This document shows positions 10,206-20,582 of a stretch of DNA of 64,000 bases, in pieces (positions within the stretch are counted from its first letter, which is position 1; every line of letters starts with the position of its first letter). Position numbers and translations under genes: made by a program. The notes under the pieces are model-generated. The model saw only the letters and a list, made by a program, of their open reading frames with translations, had not been told where the DNA came from and made no database searches. Location of the stretch: NCBI RefSeq assembly GCF_902459465.1, contig NC_047065.1:10044001-10108000 (forward strand). Direction: 5' to 3'. The stretch is from Asterias rubens (taxonomy: Eukaryota).

Positions 10206-10602
10206 CCAAGAACAAGCCCAAGTCATTTACTCTGGCTGAGGTAATGAGCAAATGTCTTGTTCTCCAGTAATTCCACCCCACAAATCTACTCCATGGAATG
10301 CAGATGAGAAATTAAGTCACTTATAAAGATCATTTCTACTTCCCATCTTACATAATAAATTTGGATACAGCATTGTTCTTTGGAAGTTTATATTTATCAT
10401 TCAATCTCTCTGATCTTTAATAATAGCTAACCCAAGGTCATTGCTTAATTTAACCATCCTTTCACAGTCTTTGAGCACCATGTTGGAATGATGCATGCAC
10501 CAAAACGTTATTATACCAGCCACTGGTGTGTTGGGCTCATTCATTCTTGTTCCATGCAAGACAGACATCGTAAAAACATTAGCATGAGTCCAGGAGCCAC
10601 TG

Positions 10603-11123
10603 TCAAAAGTGAATTTGGATTTCTTTATTTGGATGAAGAGGCTGTGCAGCACTTCTCCTGAATGACTCGTTGTACTGGTTAGCACGTACCCAAGGGGAAT
10701 CAGGATCCACATAAGGTCTCTGCTGCCGGGGTTCAAATCCTAGCTCACTGTCCATGATTTTCTCATATTCCTTCATCTGGTTATTAGTCATTGGAAAGTC
10801 ATGGCTAGAGGTGGAAACCCCTGGCCCCCCAGTATTGTTGTTTGTGCGTGTAGATGGAAACTGACTGTACTGTGTGTTATATTTGTCCCCTAGTGAGTTC
10901 ATTTCATGAGACTCTTGGTTCTCTTTATCCATCATGAGCTGCACCTGCTGGTTCATCATTCTCCTCTTAGATGCCATTGTCTTAGCTTTCTCTCTTGTCC
11001 TTAGACATGAATGTCTGCATGTTACACAGGTTGTTATGACGGTTACAGATACAATAATTCCCATGGTAACAGCCAACACTATATCAACTTTACCATCCAT
11101 CCAGCCAGTCTGGTCTTTAACTT
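10603..11123 (-). CDS. Neto: Neto exon 7: transmembrane helix and cytoplasmic tail ending EIQIHF*
   Basis: Acceptor tgatatttcAG; TM IVLAVTMGIIVSVTVITTCVTC followed by a basic stretch; TGA at 10603-10605. The seven exons total 1503 nt (divisible by 3). Confidence 0.9.
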
Positions 11124-11869
11124 CTGAAATATCATAAAAGCACATGAACTTTTCAATAGGTTTTAGCATTGTATGACCAACCTTGTGCACTGTGATGCAA
11201 CCTTCCCTTGCCAATTGTTTGGACGAATGAGCCATAACAATTGCTTTGGGAATGACGCTGAGAATCAGCATAGAAAGTCAATGTACACCGTCCTATATTT
11301 AGTTCCATATATGACAGTCCAATTGCGGCAGTAAATACATTGCAAACTAAAGGATGATACGTGACATTTGCTCCACCAATCGTGAATAAGGATCTATGTG
11401 TGACTTTTATAAAACCTATCAACTTTGCAGTGTAACATGATAACCTTTGTTTGCAACTCTGCACAGTCTACCCGCAGTACACTCAATATAATAAGTCTCT
11501 TTTGTTATCTGCGCGAGTTAGCGTGATTTTTCATGCGTGACCTCGGTTTGAATACTAATTAGTCCAAAGGGCTTCTGAAATTCAGTCTTTTTCAGCCTTA
11601 TCTGAAAAGTATTGACATAAATAATGTAGAAGTACACTGAAATGAAGAGCATATCTGTCGTGTTGTATGAAAAAAACTTGCTGCAACTCAAATTTTAAAA
11701 AGAGAAATTTGAACGTAAAAAATGGCTTCCAAAATAAAGAAAACAAGTCACATATCTATAGGGCGCCGTTTATGACTTTATTACGACACCAATGTATATA
11801 GAATGACACCAATATATATGGAATGAAACCAATATATATAGAACGAAATAAATATAATGAATAGGGTAG

Positions 11870-11913
11870 ATGGCCTTAGCTTTTGATCCAATCCGGACCT
11901 TCTTCAGAGGCAT
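11870..11913 (-). ncRNA. Minimal type I hammerhead ribozyme of the PLE terminal repeat (G12A, probably inactive)
   Basis: Minus strand ATGCCT-CTGAAGA-A-GGTCC ggatt GGATC-AAAA-GC-TA|AGGC: stem I GCCT/AGGC, CUGANGA core, stem II, GAAA changed to AAAA, palindromic stem III. Confidence 0.8.
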
Positions 11914-12480
11914 AAAACAAGTACAAACAAATACATATCCATTTATAGAAAAAGAGAGGGGGAAAGGGATTAAGGAAAGGATCCAGAAAGAAGCGGGAAA
12001 ATAACAGCCAATCAAAGTTTCTATTTCAGAGACAATTTTGGTGGCTATGAACCAATAGGAGTGAAGTGGCGAGGACAAAGGATGTTTAGAATGAAAGGAT
12101 GGGTTAATGGACCATAAAAGTGGTAAATGTATTGTTCGACAACAATGCAGGGAGACATGAAAGGGTAGGATTAGAGAGCAAGTTGCATCATGATGCAACT
12201 AACAATGGTCAATTAATAAGAATAGCAAGATCAAAGGTATGATGATTTTAAAAATAGGTATGTGGGACCTGTGGAAAAATAGGGGGGCGGGGTTACTTAC
12301 ATCAGATAGTTACAGTGATGAATTGATAAAAACAACTTTAAACTAGATTAATTTATACTTTATGTACAGAATATATACAGCAATAAGTTCTTAGGCAGAA
12401 GTGAAGTGGAGGGTAATGAGAAGTTATTTAACACCAGTGTTTATAAGTAGGATTTGAAACTTCGCATGGTGGAAGTAAGA

Positions 12481-12615
12481 TATAGAAAAGTTTGCGGTAA
12501 CACCATGTAATAACAATCTCTAAATGAGTTGGGGTGGTTCCAACGGTTCTTTTCAGAACCACCCCAACTCATTTAGAGATTGTTATTACATGGTGTTACC
12601 GCAAACTTTTCTATA
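12481..12615. repeat. Perfect 60-bp inverted repeat (15-nt loop) inserted at the PLE ORF end
   Basis: 12481-12540 is the exact reverse complement of 12556-12615; flanked by duplicated ACCAGTGTTTAT (12433-12444 and 12615-12626). Confidence 0.92.
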
Positions 12616-14454
12616 CCAGTGTTTATGTTGAGTCCAAAGGGTTTGACTGTCTTGAGTTGGTGGATCCAGTGTGATTTTCTACTCTTGCGATGTGTCATCA
12701 CCATTGCAAGCTTCAATCACCAGAAGTTCAACATCAATGACACTATGATTGGGGCTGTTGAAGTGGATAGAGACTGGGTACGGTTTCTTAGTCTTTATGG
12801 AAGAGACATGATTCGCTAAGCGAAGACTAAGTTTGGTCTTAGTCTCTCCCACATATTGTAGCCCACATCTCTTACATGATATTACATAGACTACATTAGA
12901 CGTGCTGCATTCAGAGTCGGTCTTGATGTTGTATGAAGAGCCAGTGGTATGACTCTTCACCTTAAGTGAGGGCTTAATGTGCAGACACGTTTTGCATTTG
13001 GAACGGGTACATTTGTGACAGCCCAGTATATCTGTCGGGGGTTGTGTTTGGACTATACCTGGGGGAAGTTTGGCCCTGACTAGTATGTCACCAAGGTTCT
13101 TAGGGCGGCGGAATGCAACCATGGGAACCTCAGGGATTGCTGAGTGTAACCTGCTGGAGGAGTGAAGTATAGGCATGTTATTATTGAGAATTGAGGGAAG
13201 TTTGGGTAATTTGGGGTGGAAGGTGGTGACCAAAGCAACTCTATTGGTAGGAGCTTTTTTAGCTCCTGTGTTAGTCAACAGAGTATGACGAGGTACGTTG
13301 AGAGCCCTGTTGATAGCAAGTTGGACCCTACGTTCGCTGTGTCCCCTAGATACAAGGTGTTTCCTTAGCTCTGATGAGCGCCTCTTGTACAGATACGCCT
13401 GATACGTAAGGCCTGACTGTAAGCAATTGCCTTCTTACAGTGACTAGGGTGACAGCTATTGGAGAGAAGGTACTGGTGGGTGTCGGTGGGTATACTGTAA
13501 ACATCTGTGACAAGGCCATTAGGAGACTTGGTTATTGTCACATCTAGAAAGTTCACACTGGTGAGAGATTGTTCGGTACTGAACTTTATGGTGGGGTGAA
13601 ATGAGTTGATATGGTCAATAAACTCATCCAAGCTGTCTTGGTCACCACACCAGATGGAGAAAATATCATCAATAAATCTCCACCAAACTAGTGGTCGGTT
13701 AGGGGCGGAGGACAGGAGTCTGTCCTCCAACTGAGACATGAATAGGTTGGCATATGAGGGTGCCATTTTGGTACCCATGGCAGTACCCTGTACCTGTAGA
13801 AAATGCCTGTCAGAAAATGTGAAATATTCTTCATTAGAATGTGGCTCATGAGTTCCTTAATATGACTCACTGAGGGGCGGGACTGATTACTAGCATTGAG
13901 GGCAGAGACACATGCACTCATGCCTTCATGATGGGGTATGTTAGTATACAGTGATGAAACATCAAAAGTAACCAAAATAGCAGAGTCGGGTACTTGGTGC
14001 TTGACCTTATCTAGTTTGTGGAGAAAGTCTTTGGTATCCTTGATGAAGGAAGGAATACGGCAGACTATAAGGGTTTGAGGAAGCTATCTACAAACTCAGA
14101 AATGCGCTCTGTGGGGCTACCATTCCCAGATACAATAGGTCTCCCCGGGTTATTGGGCTTGTGTATCTTAGGTAGAAGGTAGAACCTTGCTGTACGGGGG
14201 TCATGTGGGAGGAGATAGTTAAATGTATCTTTCTCGATACCATTGGCGTTATAAATCCTAACCAGGGTGTCACTGATATCTTGGGAGAAAGATTCAGTGG
14301 GATCAGAAGCACATTCAATGTAATGATCAGTGTTACTGAGCTGTCTAAGGCCCTCAGCAATGTAGCCATGTGTGTTCATGACTACAACTGCGGACCCCTT
14401 GTCAGCCCGTTTAATCACTATGTCTGGTGATTGGTAGTCTTTGTTCAGGACTCT

Positions 14455-14681
14455 CCTGGATTTGTAACAAGAAAGCGCGCTATCACCCCCAACGCGCTAT
14501 CAACCATATCAAACATAATGCGCGTGCGTAGGTTTCCCGGCCGCGCGCCCCTTTTTTTGGGGGGGGGGGAGATTTAACGAATGTGCCAAGACTCTCCTGT
14601 GATAGCGGTTCTCGGGTGATAGCGGTTCGTGGTTGATAGCGCGTTGGGGGTGATAGCGCGCCCTGTTGTGACAAATCCAGG
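14455..14681. mobile_element. MITE (CCTGGATTTG...CAAATCCAGG) inserted in the PLE ORF
   Basis: ~50-bp TIR including gcgcgctatcacccccaacgcgctatcaacc; target duplication GGTGATTGG at 14426-14434 and 14680-14688. Removing the insertion restores LRQSPDIVIKRADKG. Confidence 0.88.
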
Positions 14682-16611
14682 TGATTGGCGGAGTTGTGTC
14701 AGGGCGTGACGCTCATCTTGGGGGAGGTTATTGGGAGTAGGGGTACTGGGGGCATTAAGAACCTCGGAGTTAACCGAATTGATGTATGTCTATAGAGACA
14801 CATCTCGGTTCTTAGGGGGTACCCAAGTACTCTTTTCCCTGAAGCGGTTGCGGGGAATAGGTTGGGTCTCCACAGATGACTCGTCATCCATGGAGGGCTC
14901 TACATGAAAGTATTCACGTAGGCATAACCTACAATTGAATTGGGCCATGTCCTATTGGAAAAGAAGTTTGTTAGGTTCTCTGGGTGTGGGGCAAAACTTA
15001 AGACCCCTTGAGAGGAGTTTAACCTGTGGGTCAGTAAGGACCATGTCAGACAGGTTAACTACAGTATTGGTCTCTGGCGACCTAACAGTAGGAGGAGCAA
15101 TGGTGGCTCTCTTACTGTGGAAACGTCTATGGGTGTGTTTCTTATGGTTAGCCTGGACATTCATACGTTTCTTGTTCTGTGTGTCCATTAGGGTGGACCT
15201 TAAGTGTTTGACGTTACTTAGTATGGTATCTTGTAACTGTTCAAACCCTTCAATAGAACATGACTCCTGGAGTTGAGACTCAGTGTCTGTTATCTCAAGC
15301 AACTGGTTATCAATGAATTGTTGGCATTGATTTTCCAGCAACTTGATCAAACGGAAAGACGTATTAGTGAGTGTCTTGTTCCATTTCTTCAAAAAGGGTG
15401 GGACAAGGTCCCCAAAGGAAGGGGTACACTTGATCTGTAGGCTTTTGGGAATGATACGGGACAAATGATAAAAACGGTAGTTATCAAGATGTGACATGTA
15501 ACGGGTGTTCTTTTCCTTAAGTTTACGAAGCTTGCGGATAATGCACTTGGTGTCGGGAGCAAGTGCCATAGTGGATGGGGAAATACAGTCAAGGGGAAAT
15601 ATGTATAGGACGAAATAAAAAATATATAGAACGAAATATGAAATATATAGAACAAAAATAAATATATAGAACGAAAATAAATATAGAGAATGAAGTAAAA
15701 AACATATAGAACAAAAATAAATATATAGAACAAAAAATATATAGAACCTAACAAAAATATATAGAACGAAATAAAATATATATAGAATAAAATAAAGTAT
15801 AATTATATAGTATGACAAAATATTATAGAACAAAATACATATATACATATAACCAAATAAAAAATATATAGAACAAAACAGTAATATATGGAACGAAACA
15901 TTAAATAGAACGAAGCGCCCCCTTCGACGAATAAGGGCCAGGCCGCACAGTGCGGCCTCTTCGTTCTATATATTTTTGTTTCATTCATTTCTGTTCCGCG
16001 CTATTAGCGTAGGTGCATGAACATTAGCATAATAGCAGGAAGCGCCGCCCGCGGGACGGACCAGTATTTTAGACTTGAAATCAAGTCGTTAGACAACAGA
16101 GTCGTCGTGCACACTTCCTTACTGCTGATGATAAACGTTTAATTATCGATCGCTGTTATAAGGAGGGCTACACGACTGGACATAATAACTCAAAATGTTC
16201 AATGATCTTAGATTATCACACAGCCATAGACAATTTTCCCAATTTGGAGGAACAAACTGCAACTTAAATTCAGGCTGGTTTATGACGATTCAGTTCCAAG
16301 TGCAGCTGAAAGAAACATTTATTACAAAAATAATTGCAGATATGGGAGTGTTTTTTGAACATTGCCCTAACAAATTCACGGCTATTTCGGCCCGACGATT
16401 TACTATTTCGACCGCGGGTGATTTATTGTCGTTTTTAAAACGAAATACGTTAATGTTTTGTTGTTGCTGTTCACGGGTTCAAGTCAAGAGAGGGCGCTGT
16501 AACCAAACCCTATTTTCATAGTGCCCGCCCGCCCGCCCACAAAAAACGCGCGCACGATCACGACTAGATCTAGTTCATGACCATGTTTCACTGAGCCAGC
16601 CAGAATACAGA

Positions 16612-16833
16612 ACGTTTCAAGATACGCAGCGTTGCTTACGTTTCAAGATATGCAGCTACGTTTACGTTTCAAGATACGCAGCTACGCTTACGTTTCAAGA
16701 TACGCAGCGTTGCTTACGTTTCAAGATATGCAGCTACGTTTACGTTTCAAGATACGCAGCTACGCTTACGCTTCAAGATACGCAGCGTCGCTTACGTTTC
16801 AAGATATGCAGCTACGCTTACGTTTCAAGATAC
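16612..16833 (+). repeat. 26-bp minisatellite with 78-bp higher-order (ABC) periodicity
   Basis: 8.5 monomers acgtttcaagata(c/t)gcagc...; order A B C A B C A' B'. Confidence 0.9.
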
Positions 16834-17953
16834 ACTTCTCATGGGCACTTTCGAATCCTTCTAAATTCCCTCCCCTTCCCCAAGATGCTTTAAAAAATTC
16901 GTTCACATACCAGGGCCCACCAGTTTTATCTGTTGAGCAGAAAATACTGCTTAAAAAAATTTCTTTACTAGCCAAAGTTTTTGGTATTGGCACCAGCCAC
17001 AAGTCCAAACATTTCAATTTTAAGTACTTTTTGATATTCAACCTCTAGTCTTGATGACCCATACTTAAATTTTTAATCATAACGTGCACTACCTTGTTTT
17101 GCAACACATTCCAATCATCCTCGCCTGACACACTACAGAATTCATCCCCCTCTAGCCACCCTTACCTTTAGCATAATCGATTCTCCTTCCTTTGTTTCAA
17201 GTTACCATATTATATCTTTTAATAATAACCTTTTGTACTATTAGTGCTATTATTTGTTTTTATGCTGATTGGTGTTGTAGTTGAAGAAAATACTTGTTTT
17301 TTTTTAGAGTCTCAGAGAAGTTCTTCTTGCACCACTTTTGTTATAAATAGGCTATCAATGAACATTGCATAAAAATATTTCAACCCCGGCGGCGTAATTT
17401 ACTTCATAATATCAGCAATGCCTGCTTCTCAAGGTGTTATGGCTTTTGATTTGTAATCTGTTAAAAAAAAAACATTGGCACCGTGTTCTTGGTTTATTTG
17501 TAGTCATGGCTTAGTATTTATAGTTTTGATCTTGAATTTTGCTGGCTGAAGTGAGTTCCCCTAGTGCTAGTTACATAATACTCTGAAAGTTGGATTCCTG
17601 TTTTCTTATAACGTATGCTGCATGCCGTGGTGACCGAAACAAAAGAAGGAAGAGTTCTGAAACTCAGCAATCCAAGCTGATGCATGCATCCCCCTTTTTT
17701 CTCTATATTATTGTTTGGTAATTTCACTTCAAACCAGCCTGAATGTAGTCTTATCCCTTTAGTTTGTTTCCCAAAATTGGGAAAAATTCTCTGTGGCTGT
17801 GTGGTTATCGATAAGGTCATTGATTTTTTTAAGTTAACATGTCCAGTCGTGTAGCCATCCTTGTGCACGACGACTCTGTTATCTAACGACTTGATTTCAA
17901 GTCTAGCATACTGGTCTGTCGCGCGGGCGGCGCTTCCTGCTATTTATGCTTAT

Positions 17954-18070
17954 GTTCGTGCTACTAAAGTACTATGCTAATGTTCGTGCTACTAAAGTAC
18001 TATGCTAATGTTCGTGCTACTAAAGTACTATGCTAATGTCGTGCCGTGCAGCTATGCTAATGTTTGTGCT
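17954..18070 (+). repeat. 28-bp tandem repeat (tgttcgtgctactaaagtactatgctaa), degenerate, in the right foldback arm
   Basis: 2-3 near-exact copies plus degenerate tails. Confidence 0.75.
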
Positions 18071-18791
18071 ATTACGCTAATGTTGTACAACCCCTGGCCC
18101 TTATTCGTCGAAGGGGGCGCTTCGTTCTATTTATTTATGTTTCGTCCCATATATTTCTGTTTTGTTCTATATTATTTTTATATTGTTATTTCGTTATATT
18201 TCATTCTATATATATTTTATTTCACTCTATTATATATTTTTGTTACGTTCTATATATTTCTTTTTCGTTCTATATATTTATTTTCGTTCTATATATTTTT
18301 TATTTCGTTCTCAATATTTTTATTTCATTCTATATATATTTTATTTCGTTCTATATGTTTATTTTCATTCTATATATTTATTTTCGTTCTATATATTTCA
18401 TATTTCGTTCTATATATTTTTTGTTTCGTCCTATATATATTTATTTCGTTCTATATATATTGGTTTCATTCCATATATATTGGTGTCATTCTATAAACAT
18501 TGGTGTCGTAATAAAGTCATAAACGGCGCGGCGCCCCATACATATCCCTGCAGATAAATAACAAAGGAGATTAGTGTACTGCGGGTAGACTGTGCAGATT
18601 GGTGTATAAGCTTGGGTGAACAATTTGATGTTTGTTAAAATGAGTCTTGTTTCATTACTGCAAGCACAAAACCAATCGGAAACAGGGGTCTTCCATTTTG
18701 AATCTAATAAAGAGCCCAAACACAAGCTTTACGGCACAGACAGTTCATTGCATTGATGAGGGTGCAGTCATCCTTTAAGTCTAGCACTTAC

Positions 18792-18914
18792 CACACATTG
18801 AAGCTTCTTCATCAAAACCATAACTCCAGCAGTTCTCTCTGCCATTGCATACAAGAGACTTGTTTAAACACATGTATGGTCCACATGGGAATACAATGTT
18901 TTCATCACAAGGTC
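18792..18914 (-). CDS. Neto: Neto exon 6: LDLa module (RPCDENIVFPCGPYMCLNKSLVCNGRENCWSYGFDEEASMC)
   Basis: Six-Cys LDL-receptor class A pattern with CNG..NC...DE; AG/GTAAGT boundaries; phase 1-1. Confidence 0.93.
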
Positions 18915-19313
18915 CTGTGAATAGATCAGATTGAAAATCCATGAGCTCATTTCACTTTATTCAATGACTTTTTAAAACAAAGATCTCCATAATCACATGG
19001 ATCTCCATATTCTGAGACTATTCATTATCAATTTTTAAGCTGCAAAATTATTGATTAATTTTGTTTTATCACACTTTACACTACAGTGGCAATGGCAGAG
19101 AAACTAAACATTGCGCCTAAAGTTAACAAAATAGTTAAGATCTTTAATTGATGGTTTGATTTTCACTTTTGACTTTATCAATACAGGAGTTCCCATGATC
19201 TAACTATATAGACTCTTATTTTATTCAAGTATGATTGCAAATGTTTATCTCAAATTTGACAAATTTCAGTTATTTGATTCAACTGATTTAAAACTCAAAT
19301 CAGGTAAACTTAC

Positions 19314-19542
19314 TGTCTGTATATGCTGTAAACATCATGTTCACATTGTTGTATGAACTTTGGTTGGATGCCACAAAACGAACGAACATACGATTGCTGA
19401 TTGTCATTGCTGCGGGCGCTGTTGTACTGCAATACTCGCCTATCAACCACTCTTCGGCACTATACATGTCATAAATCATGATGCGGTTTTTCATACATTC
19501 ATTTTTGTTGTTTAGTTCGAATTTATCAAATTTTATCAATAT
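19314..19542 (-). CDS. Neto: Neto exon 5: CUB2 core (ILIKFDKFELNNKNECMKNRIMIYDMYSAEEWLIGEYCST...MMFTAYTD)
   Basis: Acceptor tttcttcaacAG, donor A|GTAAGT, phase 0->1; CUB Cys3 and Cys4 present. Confidence 0.92.
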
Positions 19543-20582
19543 CTGTTGAAGAAAAGAAAAAAGTACATTAATCTTTGAACATAATTGTAGAAGTGCTCTG
19601 CCCCCTTTCAATGAACAGTGTACCTTATCAAGAGAACAAATAACCTTTGTTTGAAGGCAGTATTTCTTATGCACTTTGCCTGTGACGTCACTTCTGCACC
19701 ATCCTAGTATAGTTATAGATAGCTGAATAAGGATTCCACCATTGAAGATTGAAGATTGAAGTAGACAAGTTGTTGAAAACCAGTGTTCTCACTTGTTGTA
19801 GAGAGAGGTTGCGTGACCCCGCAAAAAGTTCGTTGTGCGCGCTGGCGGCCATGTTGAGTGGTAACGCGTCGTCTGCTCGCAACAGCAGACGCACGTTTGT
19901 AACCGAGAAAGTTGGTTTTTCTCTGATAGACAAATATTTTGTGAAGGTCTGGTCGACTGGTCTCCAAACATTGAACTATTCTCAGCAGTGTCGTAGCCAG
20001 ATGTTATTAAATACCGTTACTCTGAGCGCATTTAAGTCCATTGATGCACCAAATTCGATGGGTGACGGAGGTAAAGGTGCACATCGAGGAAAATTTGCTC
20101 GTGAAAGTAATCAAACTTAGCAGTTTTACTGTTGAGGCCGCACTTATTGCGAAACATTATTTATTTTGTATGGACGTGCACATGGCTACCAACTACCTAC
20201 CACATCACGGTACCACCACTGTAGAAAACAAATTATTTTTGTTAAAATCGGCACTCTGGGATTTTAGATAAATGTTTTCGGCAATGGTGGTGCGGTATTT
20301 GGCTGGCCTCATCGGCACTCTGGTATATTTTAGATTCAACTATCTGAAGAGGGCGATTCACGTTGACAAAATGTCTTGGCATAGATTTGATTTATTTTGA
20401 GATGGTTTATTAATAATACAACAAAAATATTCTCGGCCAGAGGCCGAAAAACATTTTGTACATATCATGTACACATTTAAAAACTTCCAATATACAAAAG
20501 ACAAGATTGAAGAAAGCAAAGATGTCTTAAGCAAGTCAAAATTAAGTTTAAGAGAGTGAAATTAGAGAGAAAACAACGATAC

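What the first reader, a model, noticed from the sequence alone, without database searches (positions are those of the whole stretch)
11870..11913. Hammerhead ribozyme on the Neto pre-mRNA strand with a single catalytic knockout
Seen on the minus strand: GCCT-CUGAAGA-A-GGUCC/GGAUC(stem II)-AAAA-GC-UA|AGGC, a complete minimal type I hammerhead ending ~20 nt inside the PLE 3' end. The invariant GAAA reads AAAA (position 11884), the change expected from CpG decay of CGAAA. Established: Penelope-like elements carry such minimal hammerheads with a palindromic stem III, and G12 is the catalytic general base. The PLE is in the same orientation as Neto, so an active copy would cut Neto intron 6 co-transcriptionally. 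Inference: inactivation may have been needed for the insertion to be tolerated.
Basis: partly seen in the sequence, partly recalled or inferred. Interest (0 to 1): 0.72.

Follow-up and report, generated by a model that had tools for sequence, protein, structure and literature searches.

The report
Decayed Penelope hammerhead in starfish Neto intron
The motif is a real but mutated copy of the small self-cutting RNA motif found at the tail of Penelope-like jumping genes; its one core change looks like ordinary decay at a mutation-prone CpG, not a change the host gene needed.

Summary
On the minus strand at 11913..11870 lies a complete minimal type-I hammerhead (stem I, CUGAAGA, bulged A, 5-bp stem II, palindromic AGCU stem III, cleavage site UA|A). 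It reads AAAA where GAAA is expected (A12 = 11884).

It sits 22 nt from the 3' end of a full-length Penelope-like element (11855-15602). That element is young, has broken reading frames, and belongs to a family of more than 790 copies. It lies in sense in the intron between the LDLa and transmembrane exons of a Neto-like gene.

Sibling copies carry CGAAA: 29 of 29 fetched, and 411 of 412 otherwise identical 34-mers.

The selective reading is not supported:
- G12 lies in a CpG and is the most often mutated G of the motif in an older subfamily (about 15% G-to-A against 1-5% at other Gs).
- The other decay product of that CpG (C-to-T on the ribozyme strand, C11.1 to U) also occurs.
- The window copy differs from its siblings at 12 of 584 tail positions, so a core hit has about a 0.2 chance.
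- A same-family copy with an intact core sits in sense in a TRAF7-like intron.
- Lone minimal hammerheads show no detectable cleavage in vitro.
- RNA reads show no ends piling up at the cleavage site.

The scan has already reported Penelope hammerheads in this genome many times. This is a known kind.

The parts
11870..11913 (-). Minimal type-I hammerhead motif: stem I 5' strand 11913-11908, CUGAAGA 11907-11901, unpaired A 11900, stem II 11899-11895 / 11889-11885 with loop 11894-11890, A12-A13-A14 11884-11882, palindromic AGCU 11881-11878, A17 11877, stem I 3' strand 11876-11870
   Evidence: Sequence read; pattern match; descriptor scan; monomer fold gives stems I and II
11884..11884 (-). A where the general base G12 is expected. 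It is private to this copy among near-identical siblings and lies in the CpG formed by C11.1 and G12
   Evidence: (1 of 412); effect of G12A from PMC2553840
11876..11877 (-). Predicted cleavage site, between A17 (11877) and A1.1 (11876)
   Evidence: Position follows from the core alignment. No excess of read ends here (table 6)
11855..11875 (-). Rest of the element tail past the cleavage site, ending in CATTA. Beyond it the siblings diverge into (TA)n or other A+T-rich target sequence
   Evidence: Alignment of 30 copies by eye
11855..15602 (-). Full-length Penelope-like element copy (about 3.57 kb plus a 171-bp nested insert) with its reading frame in at least four overlapping pieces
   Evidence: 3' end. 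The 5' end is shared by more than 25 copies at query position 149, which is window 15602. ORF pieces
12682..13434 (-). ORF piece carrying the C-terminal GIY-YIG endonuclease domain
   Evidence: Pfam PF01541, 23.4-23.9 bits against a cut-off of 22.6
13368..14083 (-). Two overlapping ORF pieces in different frames carrying reverse-transcriptase motifs
   Evidence: Pfam RVT_1 E 2.2e-05 and 0.014, both below the gathering score
12445..12615 (.). Nested 171-bp foldback insert, absent from sibling copies and flanked by an 11-bp duplication (CCAGTGTTTAT). It is a perfect 60-nt inverted repeat around a histone-type stem-loop
   Evidence: (I9); Rfam RF00032 at 12540-12586 on the + strand, 35.6 bits; reads that skip 12432-12615
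11768..11854 (.). 20-nt-period A+T-rich minisatellite flanking the element. The same repeat continues at 15603-15900, so it is the insertion target
   Evidence: the repeat finder families D3 and D5
18784..18951 (-). Host exon region coding the LDLa domain of the Neto-like gene, upstream of the intron
   Evidence: Pfam Ldl_recept_a E 0.005; best solved-structure hit NETO2 7f56_E residues 294-329
19303..19788 (-). Open frame containing the host exon for the second CUB domain
   Evidence: Pfam CUB E 7.5e-10; NETO2 7f56_E residues 218-294, E 3e-08
10606..11277 (-). Open frame containing the host exon for the transmembrane segment and cytoplasmic tail, downstream of the intron
   Evidence: Hydrophobic segment followed by a basic stretch in the translation; only weak membrane-protein Pfam hits; a 1167-nt contig of run X1 covers 10500-11124 without differences

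Best explanation
This is the standard 3'-terminal minimal hammerhead motif of a canonical Penelope-like retrotransposon (reverse transcriptase followed by a GIY-YIG endonuclease). The copy is a full-length but coding-dead insertion in an A+T-rich minisatellite, inside the intron between the LDLa and transmembrane exons of a starfish Neto-like gene, in sense. After insertion the copy drifted neutrally. One of its roughly 12 changes in the last 584 nt is a G-to-A transition at the CpG formed by C11.1 and G12, which replaces the general base and should reduce any cleavage by at least 500-fold. Shown here: the motif, the family state, that the change is private, the CpG excess, the gene orientation, and an intact sense-intronic sibling. 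Inferred: that the change came after insertion, that methyl-cytosine deamination caused it, and that it has no effect on Neto. The last point rests on the observation that a lone minimal hammerhead without helix III needs a second copy to fold and barely cleaves even then.
For: Motif and coordinates. Element identity: GIY-YIG and RT pieces, shared 5' end, shared 3' end followed by (TA)n, variable 5' truncation. Family state: 29 of 29 siblings have CGAAA. The 34-mer with N at G12 gives 412 hits and the A form gives only the window. Mutation load: 12 differences from the sibling majority in 584 nt, including 1 of 5 CpGs lost. That gives a 0.17-0.20 chance of hitting one of 9-11 essential core bases. 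CpG hot spot: genome-wide the 19-mer has 748 G12 and 44 A12 copies. Of 20 A12 copies fetched, 19 lie in an older subfamily with loop GGTTT or further diverged loops. In the first 100 rows of that subfamily G12-to-A occurs 15 times, against 1, 4, 5, 5 and 3 at five non-CpG Gs (Fisher P 6e-05). The same CpG reads CA 13 times and TG 5 times, a non-significant difference. Tolerance of intact copies: a same-family copy with an intact core lies on the + strand at C4:4208894. It sits between RING and zf-TRAF exons upstream and a WD40 exon downstream, all on the + strand. Activity: a single minimal hammerhead showed no detectable self-cleavage, and dimers showed low cleavage (PMC4209133). The AGCU/AGCU trans helix is worth only about -4.5 kcal/mol. 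At about 200-fold read depth per orientation, no pile-up of read ends occurs at the cleavage site. An intron cut by a slow hammerhead is still spliced (PMC2995048).
Against: No reads cover the unique flank 11760-11843, so this locus's own pre-mRNA was not observed and the base call at 11884 has no independent read support. The raw-read RNA runs carry a different species label (organism B) from the best DNA holders. The CA versus TG count leans towards the inactivating product (13:5), though not significantly. Only one intact sense-intronic sibling was verified here; others are unverified notes. No cleavage assay exists for this family. Among near-identical young copies G12A is rare (1 of 412), so the hit is not a frequent event at that age.
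Confidence: 0.8

Rival explanations
1. Selected inactivation. An intact sense-strand hammerhead would cut the Neto pre-mRNA, so only a haplotype with the G12A knockout could persist or spread.
For: The element is in sense in the intron. The change hits the single most damaging purine (PMC2553840). It is unique among 412 near-identical copies. The CA:TG ratio at this CpG is 13:5 in the older subfamily. A 2026 preprint reports depletion of hammerhead-bearing retrozymes from introns in Xenopus.
Against: An intact-core copy of the same family sits in sense in a TRAF7-like intron. First-stage notes list several more, which I did not verify. Single minimal hammerheads do not detectably cleave. Reads show no ends at the cleavage site. 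Introns cut by slow hammerheads still splice. The neutral chance of a core hit is about 0.2. The CA:TG asymmetry is not significant. The Xenopus depletion is not orientation- or activity-specific.
Confidence: 0.06
2. Inherited state. The copy was made from a source element that already carried A12, or the tail was converted from an A12 copy of the older subfamily, so the change predates the insertion.
For: 44 copies in the genome carry CAAAA. In vitro, hammerhead-dead Penelope RNA still inserts (PMC11167929), so an A12 source could transpose.
Against: The window copy has the young-subfamily states (loop GGATT, tail CCCTATTCATT). Of 20 other A12 copies, 19 carry the older loop GGTTT or further diverged loops, and many carry CCCTACTCATT. 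No other near-identical copy shares A12. The A12 copies of the older subfamily are about 14% of it and are scattered, as expected for recurrent decay.
Confidence: 0.06
3. Assembly or polishing error. The true base at 11884 is G and the copy is intact.
For: No laid read links 11884 to the unique flank. The family has hundreds of near-identical copies, which can confuse polishing.
Against: Confusion with other copies would be expected to pull the base towards the majority G, not away from it. The copy carries about 11 other differences from the sibling majority in the same 584 nt. A minority of reads and contigs do show the A state.
Confidence: 0.03

Closest known systems
Minimal hammerhead ribozymes of metazoan Penelope-like elements (Cervera and de la Pena 2014, PMC4209133)
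   Same: [quoted passage not shown]
   Different: Helix II here is 5-6 bp rather than 7-8 bp. Helix I can extend to 6 bp with one bulged C. This particular copy has A12. No cleavage data exist for this family.
Canonical endonuclease-positive Penelope-like elements (Penelope/Poseidon, Neptune, Nematis clades; Craig et al. 2021, PMC8557442; PAc, PMC11167929)
   Same: Reverse transcriptase followed by a C-terminal GIY-YIG domain, about 3.6 kb long, a hammerhead near the 3' end, insertion into (TA)n and A+T-rich repeats, frequent 5' truncation, and some tandem or inverted arrangements elsewhere in the genome.
   Different: The window copy is a solo insertion with no upstream pseudo-LTR, so it has only one hammerhead. 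The clade was not determined. The reading frame is broken.
Intronic hammerheads and experimental intron-embedded hammerheads (Dye et al. 2006 and Fong et al. 2009, as summarised in PMC2995048)
   Same: A hammerhead on the sense strand of an intron of a protein-coding gene.
   Different: Those are complete, monomer-active ribozymes. This one lacks helix III, carries A12, and shows no sign of conservation for a host function.
G12A hammerhead mutant used in crystallography (Chi et al. 2008, PMC2553840)
   Same: The identical substitution of the general base.
   Different: That mutant was engineered in a full-length satellite-virus hammerhead. This one is a natural decay product in a minimal motif.

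Membership tests
Hammerhead ribozyme, minimal Penelope-like-element type | 5' core box C3-U4-G5-A6-N7-G8-A9 | tested here: met
   CUGAAGA at 11907-11901
Hammerhead ribozyme, minimal Penelope-like-element type | 3' core box G12-A13-A14 followed by A15.1 | tested here: not met
   The window copy reads AAAA (A12 at 11884). The family state GAAA is present in 29 of 29 siblings and 411 of 412 34-mers. The copy is therefore a mutated member, not an intact one.
Hammerhead ribozyme, minimal Penelope-like-element type | Cleavage triplet with U16.1 and H17 (not G) | tested here: met
   U 11878, A 11877
Hammerhead ribozyme, minimal Penelope-like-element type | Helices I and II flanking the core, with an unpaired base at the 5' end of helix II | tested here: met
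   The minimum-free-energy monomer fold forms GCCU/AGGC and GGUCC/GGAUC, -11.6 kcal/mol for the window copy and -12.6 for a sibling. The unpaired A is at 11900. The feature is described in PMC4209133.
Hammerhead ribozyme, minimal Penelope-like-element type | No helix III hairpin, only a short palindrome able to form helix III between two copies | tested here: met
   AGCU at 11881-11878. Duplex energy is about -4.5 kcal/mol. The nested folding model cannot score the true dimer.
Hammerhead ribozyme, minimal Penelope-like-element type | Match to a curated covariance model (Rfam hammerhead families) | tested here: not met
   No hammerhead hit at the gathering score or at E up to 10, for the window copy or for an intact sibling. 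The models require helix III, so this is uninformative for the minimal type.
Hammerhead ribozyme, minimal Penelope-like-element type | Self-cleavage | not testable with these tools
   The only indirect evidence is that read ends do not pile up at the cleavage site at about 200-fold depth per orientation.
Penelope-like element, endonuclease-positive | Reverse transcriptase followed by a C-terminal GIY-YIG endonuclease on one strand | tested here: met
   GIY-YIG is above the Pfam cut-off at 12682-13434. RVT_1 pieces at 13368-14083 are below the gathering score (E 2.2e-05). Both are on the minus strand in that order.
Penelope-like element, endonuclease-positive | Hammerhead motif in the terminal region near the 3' end | tested here: met
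   The cleavage site is 22 nt from the conserved 3' end.
Penelope-like element, endonuclease-positive | Pseudo-LTR or partial tandem arrangement | tested here: not met
   No direct repeat of the tail is present at the 5' end of the window copy. Pairs of motifs 2-4.5 kb apart elsewhere suggest tandems in other loci. This arrangement is frequent in such elements but not obligatory.
Penelope-like element, endonuclease-positive | Insertion preference for (TA)n or microsatellites, with variable 5' truncation | tested here: met
   Sibling flanks start with (TA)n or A+T-rich sequence. Homology starts at many different points in different copies.
Neto (neuropilin and tolloid-like) gene | CUB domain, then LDLa, then a transmembrane segment, in that order on one strand | tested here: met
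   The order on the minus strand is CUB 19303-19788, LDLa 18784-18951, transmembrane exon 10606-11277. The best solved-structure hit for both domains is NETO2, colinear at residues 218-294 and 294-329. The first CUB domain and the exon numbering were not checked.

The most novel reading that the evidence does not exclude
Ribozyme-dead copies are preferentially retained in sense introns. On this reading the G12A in the Neto intron was favoured because even weak or protein-assisted cleavage by an intact Penelope hammerhead harms the host transcript. A milder and better-supported version is that hammerheads whose helix II closes with the usual G10.1-C11.1 pair place the general base in a CpG. In genomes with gene-body methylation that would make genomic hammerheads self-limiting, and intronic copies would lose activity first for purely mutational reasons.
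Probability: 0.06. Interest if true: 0.6.

Novelty: new member of a known kind. Interest (0 to 1): 0.17.

Why it matters
As it stands this is an ordinary case: one more decayed copy of a known ribozyme-bearing retrotransposon. The scan has already reported Penelope hammerheads in this genome many times. Two by-products are of modest use.

First, the family gives a clean internal control for asking whether hammerhead activity is selected against in genes. The CpG at C11.1-G12 yields one strongly inactivating product (G12A) and one that keeps a G-U closing pair and is probably milder (C11.1U). Their ratio across sense-intronic, antisense-intronic and intergenic copies separates mutation from selection.

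Second, every one of the 790-plus copies keeps both sides of the scissile bond plus a 22-nt tail. The RNA that was reverse-transcribed was therefore uncut at this site. That agrees with in vitro work showing cleavage is dispensable for Penelope insertion.

Tried and rejected
- Rfam at the gathering score and at E up to 10 gave no hammerhead family for the window copy or an intact sibling. I rejected this as evidence either way because the models need helix III.
- Cofolding of two copies predicted a domain-swapped pairing of the quasi-palindromic helix II region, not the helix III dimer. The true dimer crosses helix I and cannot be scored by a nested model, so the energy argument is limited to the 4-bp AGCU duplex.
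- Locus-specific expression could not be assessed. No read covers the unique flank 11760-11843, so nothing can be said about this copy's own transcript.
- I looked for a transposing A12 subfamily. The older GGTTT-loop subfamily is mostly G12 (about 83%), so A12 there is recurrent decay and not a founder state.
- I looked at tandem arrays as a setting for dimeric cleavage. The 66-nt array at C5:213677-214225 begins at CUGA and lacks the 5' strand of helix I, so its units are not complete hammerheads. The pair 165 nt apart on C2 is not a tandem repeat by TRF.
- The raw count of 207 single-mismatch 34-mers is inflated by the GGTTT-loop subfamily, which differs at one position. I did not use it as a per-site rate.
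Majority states were used only to count differences.

Full report
**1. What is in the sequence.**
Read on the minus strand, 11913..11870 spells:
- AUGCCU
- CUGAAGA
- an unpaired A
- GGUCC, loop GGAUU, GGAUC
- AAAA
- GC, UA
- AGGCCAU

In hammerhead numbering this maps as follows:
- helix I 5' strand: 11913-11908
- C3 to A9: 11907-11901
- an extra unpaired A: 11900
- helix II: 11899-11895 paired with 11889-11885
- position 12: 11884
- A13, A14: 11883-11882
- A15.1-G-C-U16.1: 11881-11878
- A17: 11877
- helix I 3' strand: from 11876

The only departure from the invariant core is A instead of G at position 12.

A relaxed minimal-hammerhead descriptor that I ran on both strands of the whole window finds this site and no other. 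It finds 0.05 sites per dinucleotide-preserving shuffle. An exact search allowing three mismatches finds one site, with none in shuffles.

Rfam reports no hammerhead family at the gathering score, nor at E up to 10 on a 401-nt slice. It is equally silent on an intact sibling copy. The curated models require a helix III hairpin that this type lacks, so their silence carries no weight.

**2. The element that carries it.**
Upstream on the same strand lie open-frame pieces with a GIY-YIG endonuclease domain (12682-13434, above the Pfam cut-off). Further upstream are reverse-transcriptase motifs (13368-14083, below the gathering score). This order, reverse transcriptase then C-terminal GIY-YIG, is that of canonical endonuclease-positive Penelope-like elements.

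The last 340 nt match at least 40 other places in the 417.6-Mb assembly at 98-99% identity, out of 1,370 first-look candidates. All copies end in ...CCCTATTCATTA and then diverge, most often into (TA)n. Their 5' ends differ, as expected for truncated reverse transcripts. More than 25 copies share a 5' terminus that corresponds to window 15602.

The window copy is therefore full length, 11855-15602. It lies in a 20-nt-period A+T-rich minisatellite that continues on both sides. Its coding region falls into at least four overlapping frames, so it is dead as an autonomous element. It also carries a 171-bp nested insert (12445-12615) that the siblings lack.

The literature describes exactly this kind of motif:
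- They lie near the 3' end and the elements prefer (TA)n targets (PMC8557442).

**3. The family state at position 12.**
All 29 sibling copies fetched read CGAAA. A 34-mer covering G5 to helix I, with N at position 12, occurs 412 times with no hit for the reversed control. The version with A occurs once, in the window.

The change is private to this copy among near-identical copies.

With a shorter 19-mer anchor the genome holds 748 copies with G12 and 44 with A12. I fetched 20 of the A12 copies. Nineteen carry the older loop GGTTT or further diverged loops instead of GGATT, and many read CCCTACTCATT in the tail. This older subfamily has 241 copies by a 23-mer anchor. In its first 100 rows position 12 reads G 83, A 14, C 2, T 1. 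A12 is thus a recurrent decay state, not a founder state.

**4. Mutation or selection.**
Position 12 follows C11.1, so it is the G of a CpG.

In the older subfamily I left six G positions free in one pattern and tallied the first 100 rows. G-to-A occurred 15 times at G12. At the five non-CpG Gs it occurred 1, 4, 5, 5 and 3 times. The excess is significant (Fisher P 6e-05; binomial 1e-04). G12 is therefore the most mutable G of the motif, which is the opposite of what constraint would give and what CpG decay predicts.

The same CpG also yields the mirror product, C11.1 to U. Of 100 rows, 13 read CA, 5 TG and 1 TA. The lean towards the inactivating product is not significant, and two of the CA copies are one duplicated locus. 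Among the youngest copies the counts are 1 CA and 3 TG.

The window copy itself differs from the majority state of 17 siblings at 12 of 584 tail positions. Nine of these are private at the 80% level and only one is at a CpG; it has lost 1 of 5 CpGs. With that load, the chance that at least one change falls on one of the 9-11 essential core bases is 0.17-0.20. In the 30-copy sample a second copy (L024) has G8-to-A. No special explanation is needed.

**5. The host gene.**
On the minus strand there is:
- a CUB domain at 19303-19788 (Pfam E 7.5e-10)
- an LDLa domain at 18784-18951 (weak in Pfam)
- an open frame at 10606-11277 with a hydrophobic segment followed by a basic stretch

The best solved-structure hit of both extracellular pieces is NETO2, colinear at residues 218-294 and 294-329. 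The element therefore lies in sense in the intron between the LDLa and transmembrane exons of a Neto-like gene. I did not check the intron number.

**6. Would an intact copy cut the pre-mRNA?**
Four lines of evidence argue against the premise.

(a) Published assays found no detectable self-cleavage for a single minimal Penelope hammerhead and only low activity for dimers and trimers (PMC4209133). In the anole element the hammerhead needed the element's protein to cleave. Hammerhead-dead RNA inserted normally, and public RNA-seq showed no ends at the site (PMC11167929).

(b) Here the monomer fold forms helices I and II. Helix III can form only between two RNAs, through AGCU/AGCU, worth about -4.5 kcal/mol. 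The window holds no second copy.

(c) I laid three raw-read RNA runs and one contig set on 10500-13000.
- The tail of the family is covered about 200-fold in each orientation.
- Reads cross the cleavage site, and no place passes the tool's criterion for many molecules beginning or ending there.
- At 11884 about 80% of reads (97% of contig depth in run X1) show the G12 state. These reads come from other copies.
- The unique flank 11760-11843 has zero depth, so nothing is known about this locus's own RNA.
- The raw-read runs carry a different species label from the best DNA holders.

(d) Even a cleaving hammerhead need not harm the gene. Introns cut by a slow hammerhead are spliced with similar efficiency, and only fast ribozymes abort processing (Dye 2006 and Fong 2009, as summarised in PMC2995048).

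**7. A direct counter-example.**
I followed an unverified first-stage note and fetched C4:4189000-4218999. A 5'-truncated copy of the same family lies on the + strand with CUGAAGA-A-GGUCC-GGAUG-GGAUC-GAAA-GCUA|AGGCC. Its core is intact and it has one loop change.

On the + strand, upstream of it, are a RING finger (E 2.4e-09) and a TRAF-type zinc finger (E 6.6e-06). Downstream is a WD40 repeat (E 1e-07). This is the order found in TRAF7.

So a core-intact copy is tolerated in sense in an intron of another conserved gene. Other first-stage notes claim further cases, which I did not check.

A 2026 preprint reports that hammerhead-bearing retrozymes are under-represented in Xenopus introns. This fits general selection against genic insertions but does not address orientation or ribozyme activity.

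**8. Verdict.**
The causal inference is not supported. The simplest account is neutral decay of a dead insertion at the motif's own CpG.

One point follows from the copies themselves. All of them retain both sides of the scissile bond and the 22-nt tail beyond it. The template RNA was therefore uncut at this site when it was reverse-transcribed.

Remaining alternatives:
- selected inactivation, about 0.06
- an inherited A12 state, about 0.06
- an assembly error, about 0.03

The scan has already described Penelope-type hammerheads on other DNA of this genome many times (79 notes).

**9. Limits.**
- No gene annotation was available, so the proposed enrichment test could not be run.
- Tallies from pattern searches rest on the first 100 listed rows.
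Majority states were used only for counting.

Noticed in passing
window 12445-12615: A 171-bp insert nested in the Penelope-like element's 3' untranslated region, absent from all siblings and flanked by an 11-bp duplication (CCAGTGTTTAT). It is a perfect 60-nt inverted repeat centred on a histone-type 3' stem-loop (Rfam RF00032, 12540-12586 on the + strand, 35.6 bits, so antisense to the element). Reads pile up here at 300-780-fold per orientation. Loose read ends just before 12540 end in ...CTGATCGAAACGTCGAG..., which looks like the 3' half of another hammerhead. This matches the 'hammerhead plus histone stem-loop' retroposon reported by earlier notes of this scan.
   Followed up: partly
G000:C5:213677-214225 (L058:878-1426): 8.3 tandem copies (99% alike) of a 66-nt unit made of this family's tail, from CUGAAGA to CATTA plus 13 nt. 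The units lack the 5' strand of helix I, so they are probably not complete ribozymes. It is a local amplification of the element tail.
   Followed up: partly
Genome-wide: An older subfamily of the same element (loop GGTTT, tail CCCTACTCATT, 241 copies by anchor) has lost the C11.1-G12 CpG in about 19% of copies (CA 13, TG 5, TA 1 of 100). Position 12 is its most mutated G. In the RNA runs labelled organism B, about 60% of reads carry this loop variant.
   Followed up: yes
window 15902-18133: Just upstream of the Penelope-like element in the same intron there are nested inverted repeats: 41 nt at 100% (15902-15942 and 18093-18133), 83 nt at 94% (16031-16113 and 17862-17944), and 51 nt at 84%. 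They are flanked by inverted copies of the 20-nt minisatellite. This looks like a roughly 2.2-kb element with terminal inverted repeats, or a foldback.
   Followed up: no
window 16586-16871 and 17945-18091: Two further minisatellites with 26-nt and 28-nt periods lie inside that inverted-repeat-bounded segment.
   Followed up: no
G000:C4:4208800-4208960 (L032:9800-9960): A 5'-truncated copy of the same family with an intact hammerhead core lies in sense between the zinc-finger and coiled-coil/WD40 exons of a TRAF7-like gene. It is followed by a (TA)n run.
   Followed up: yes
window 11508-11759: The intronic stretch next to the minisatellite is covered 5-50-fold by RNA reads with several fixed differences from the window. 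It is probably another dispersed repeat, not the Neto pre-mRNA.
   Followed up: no
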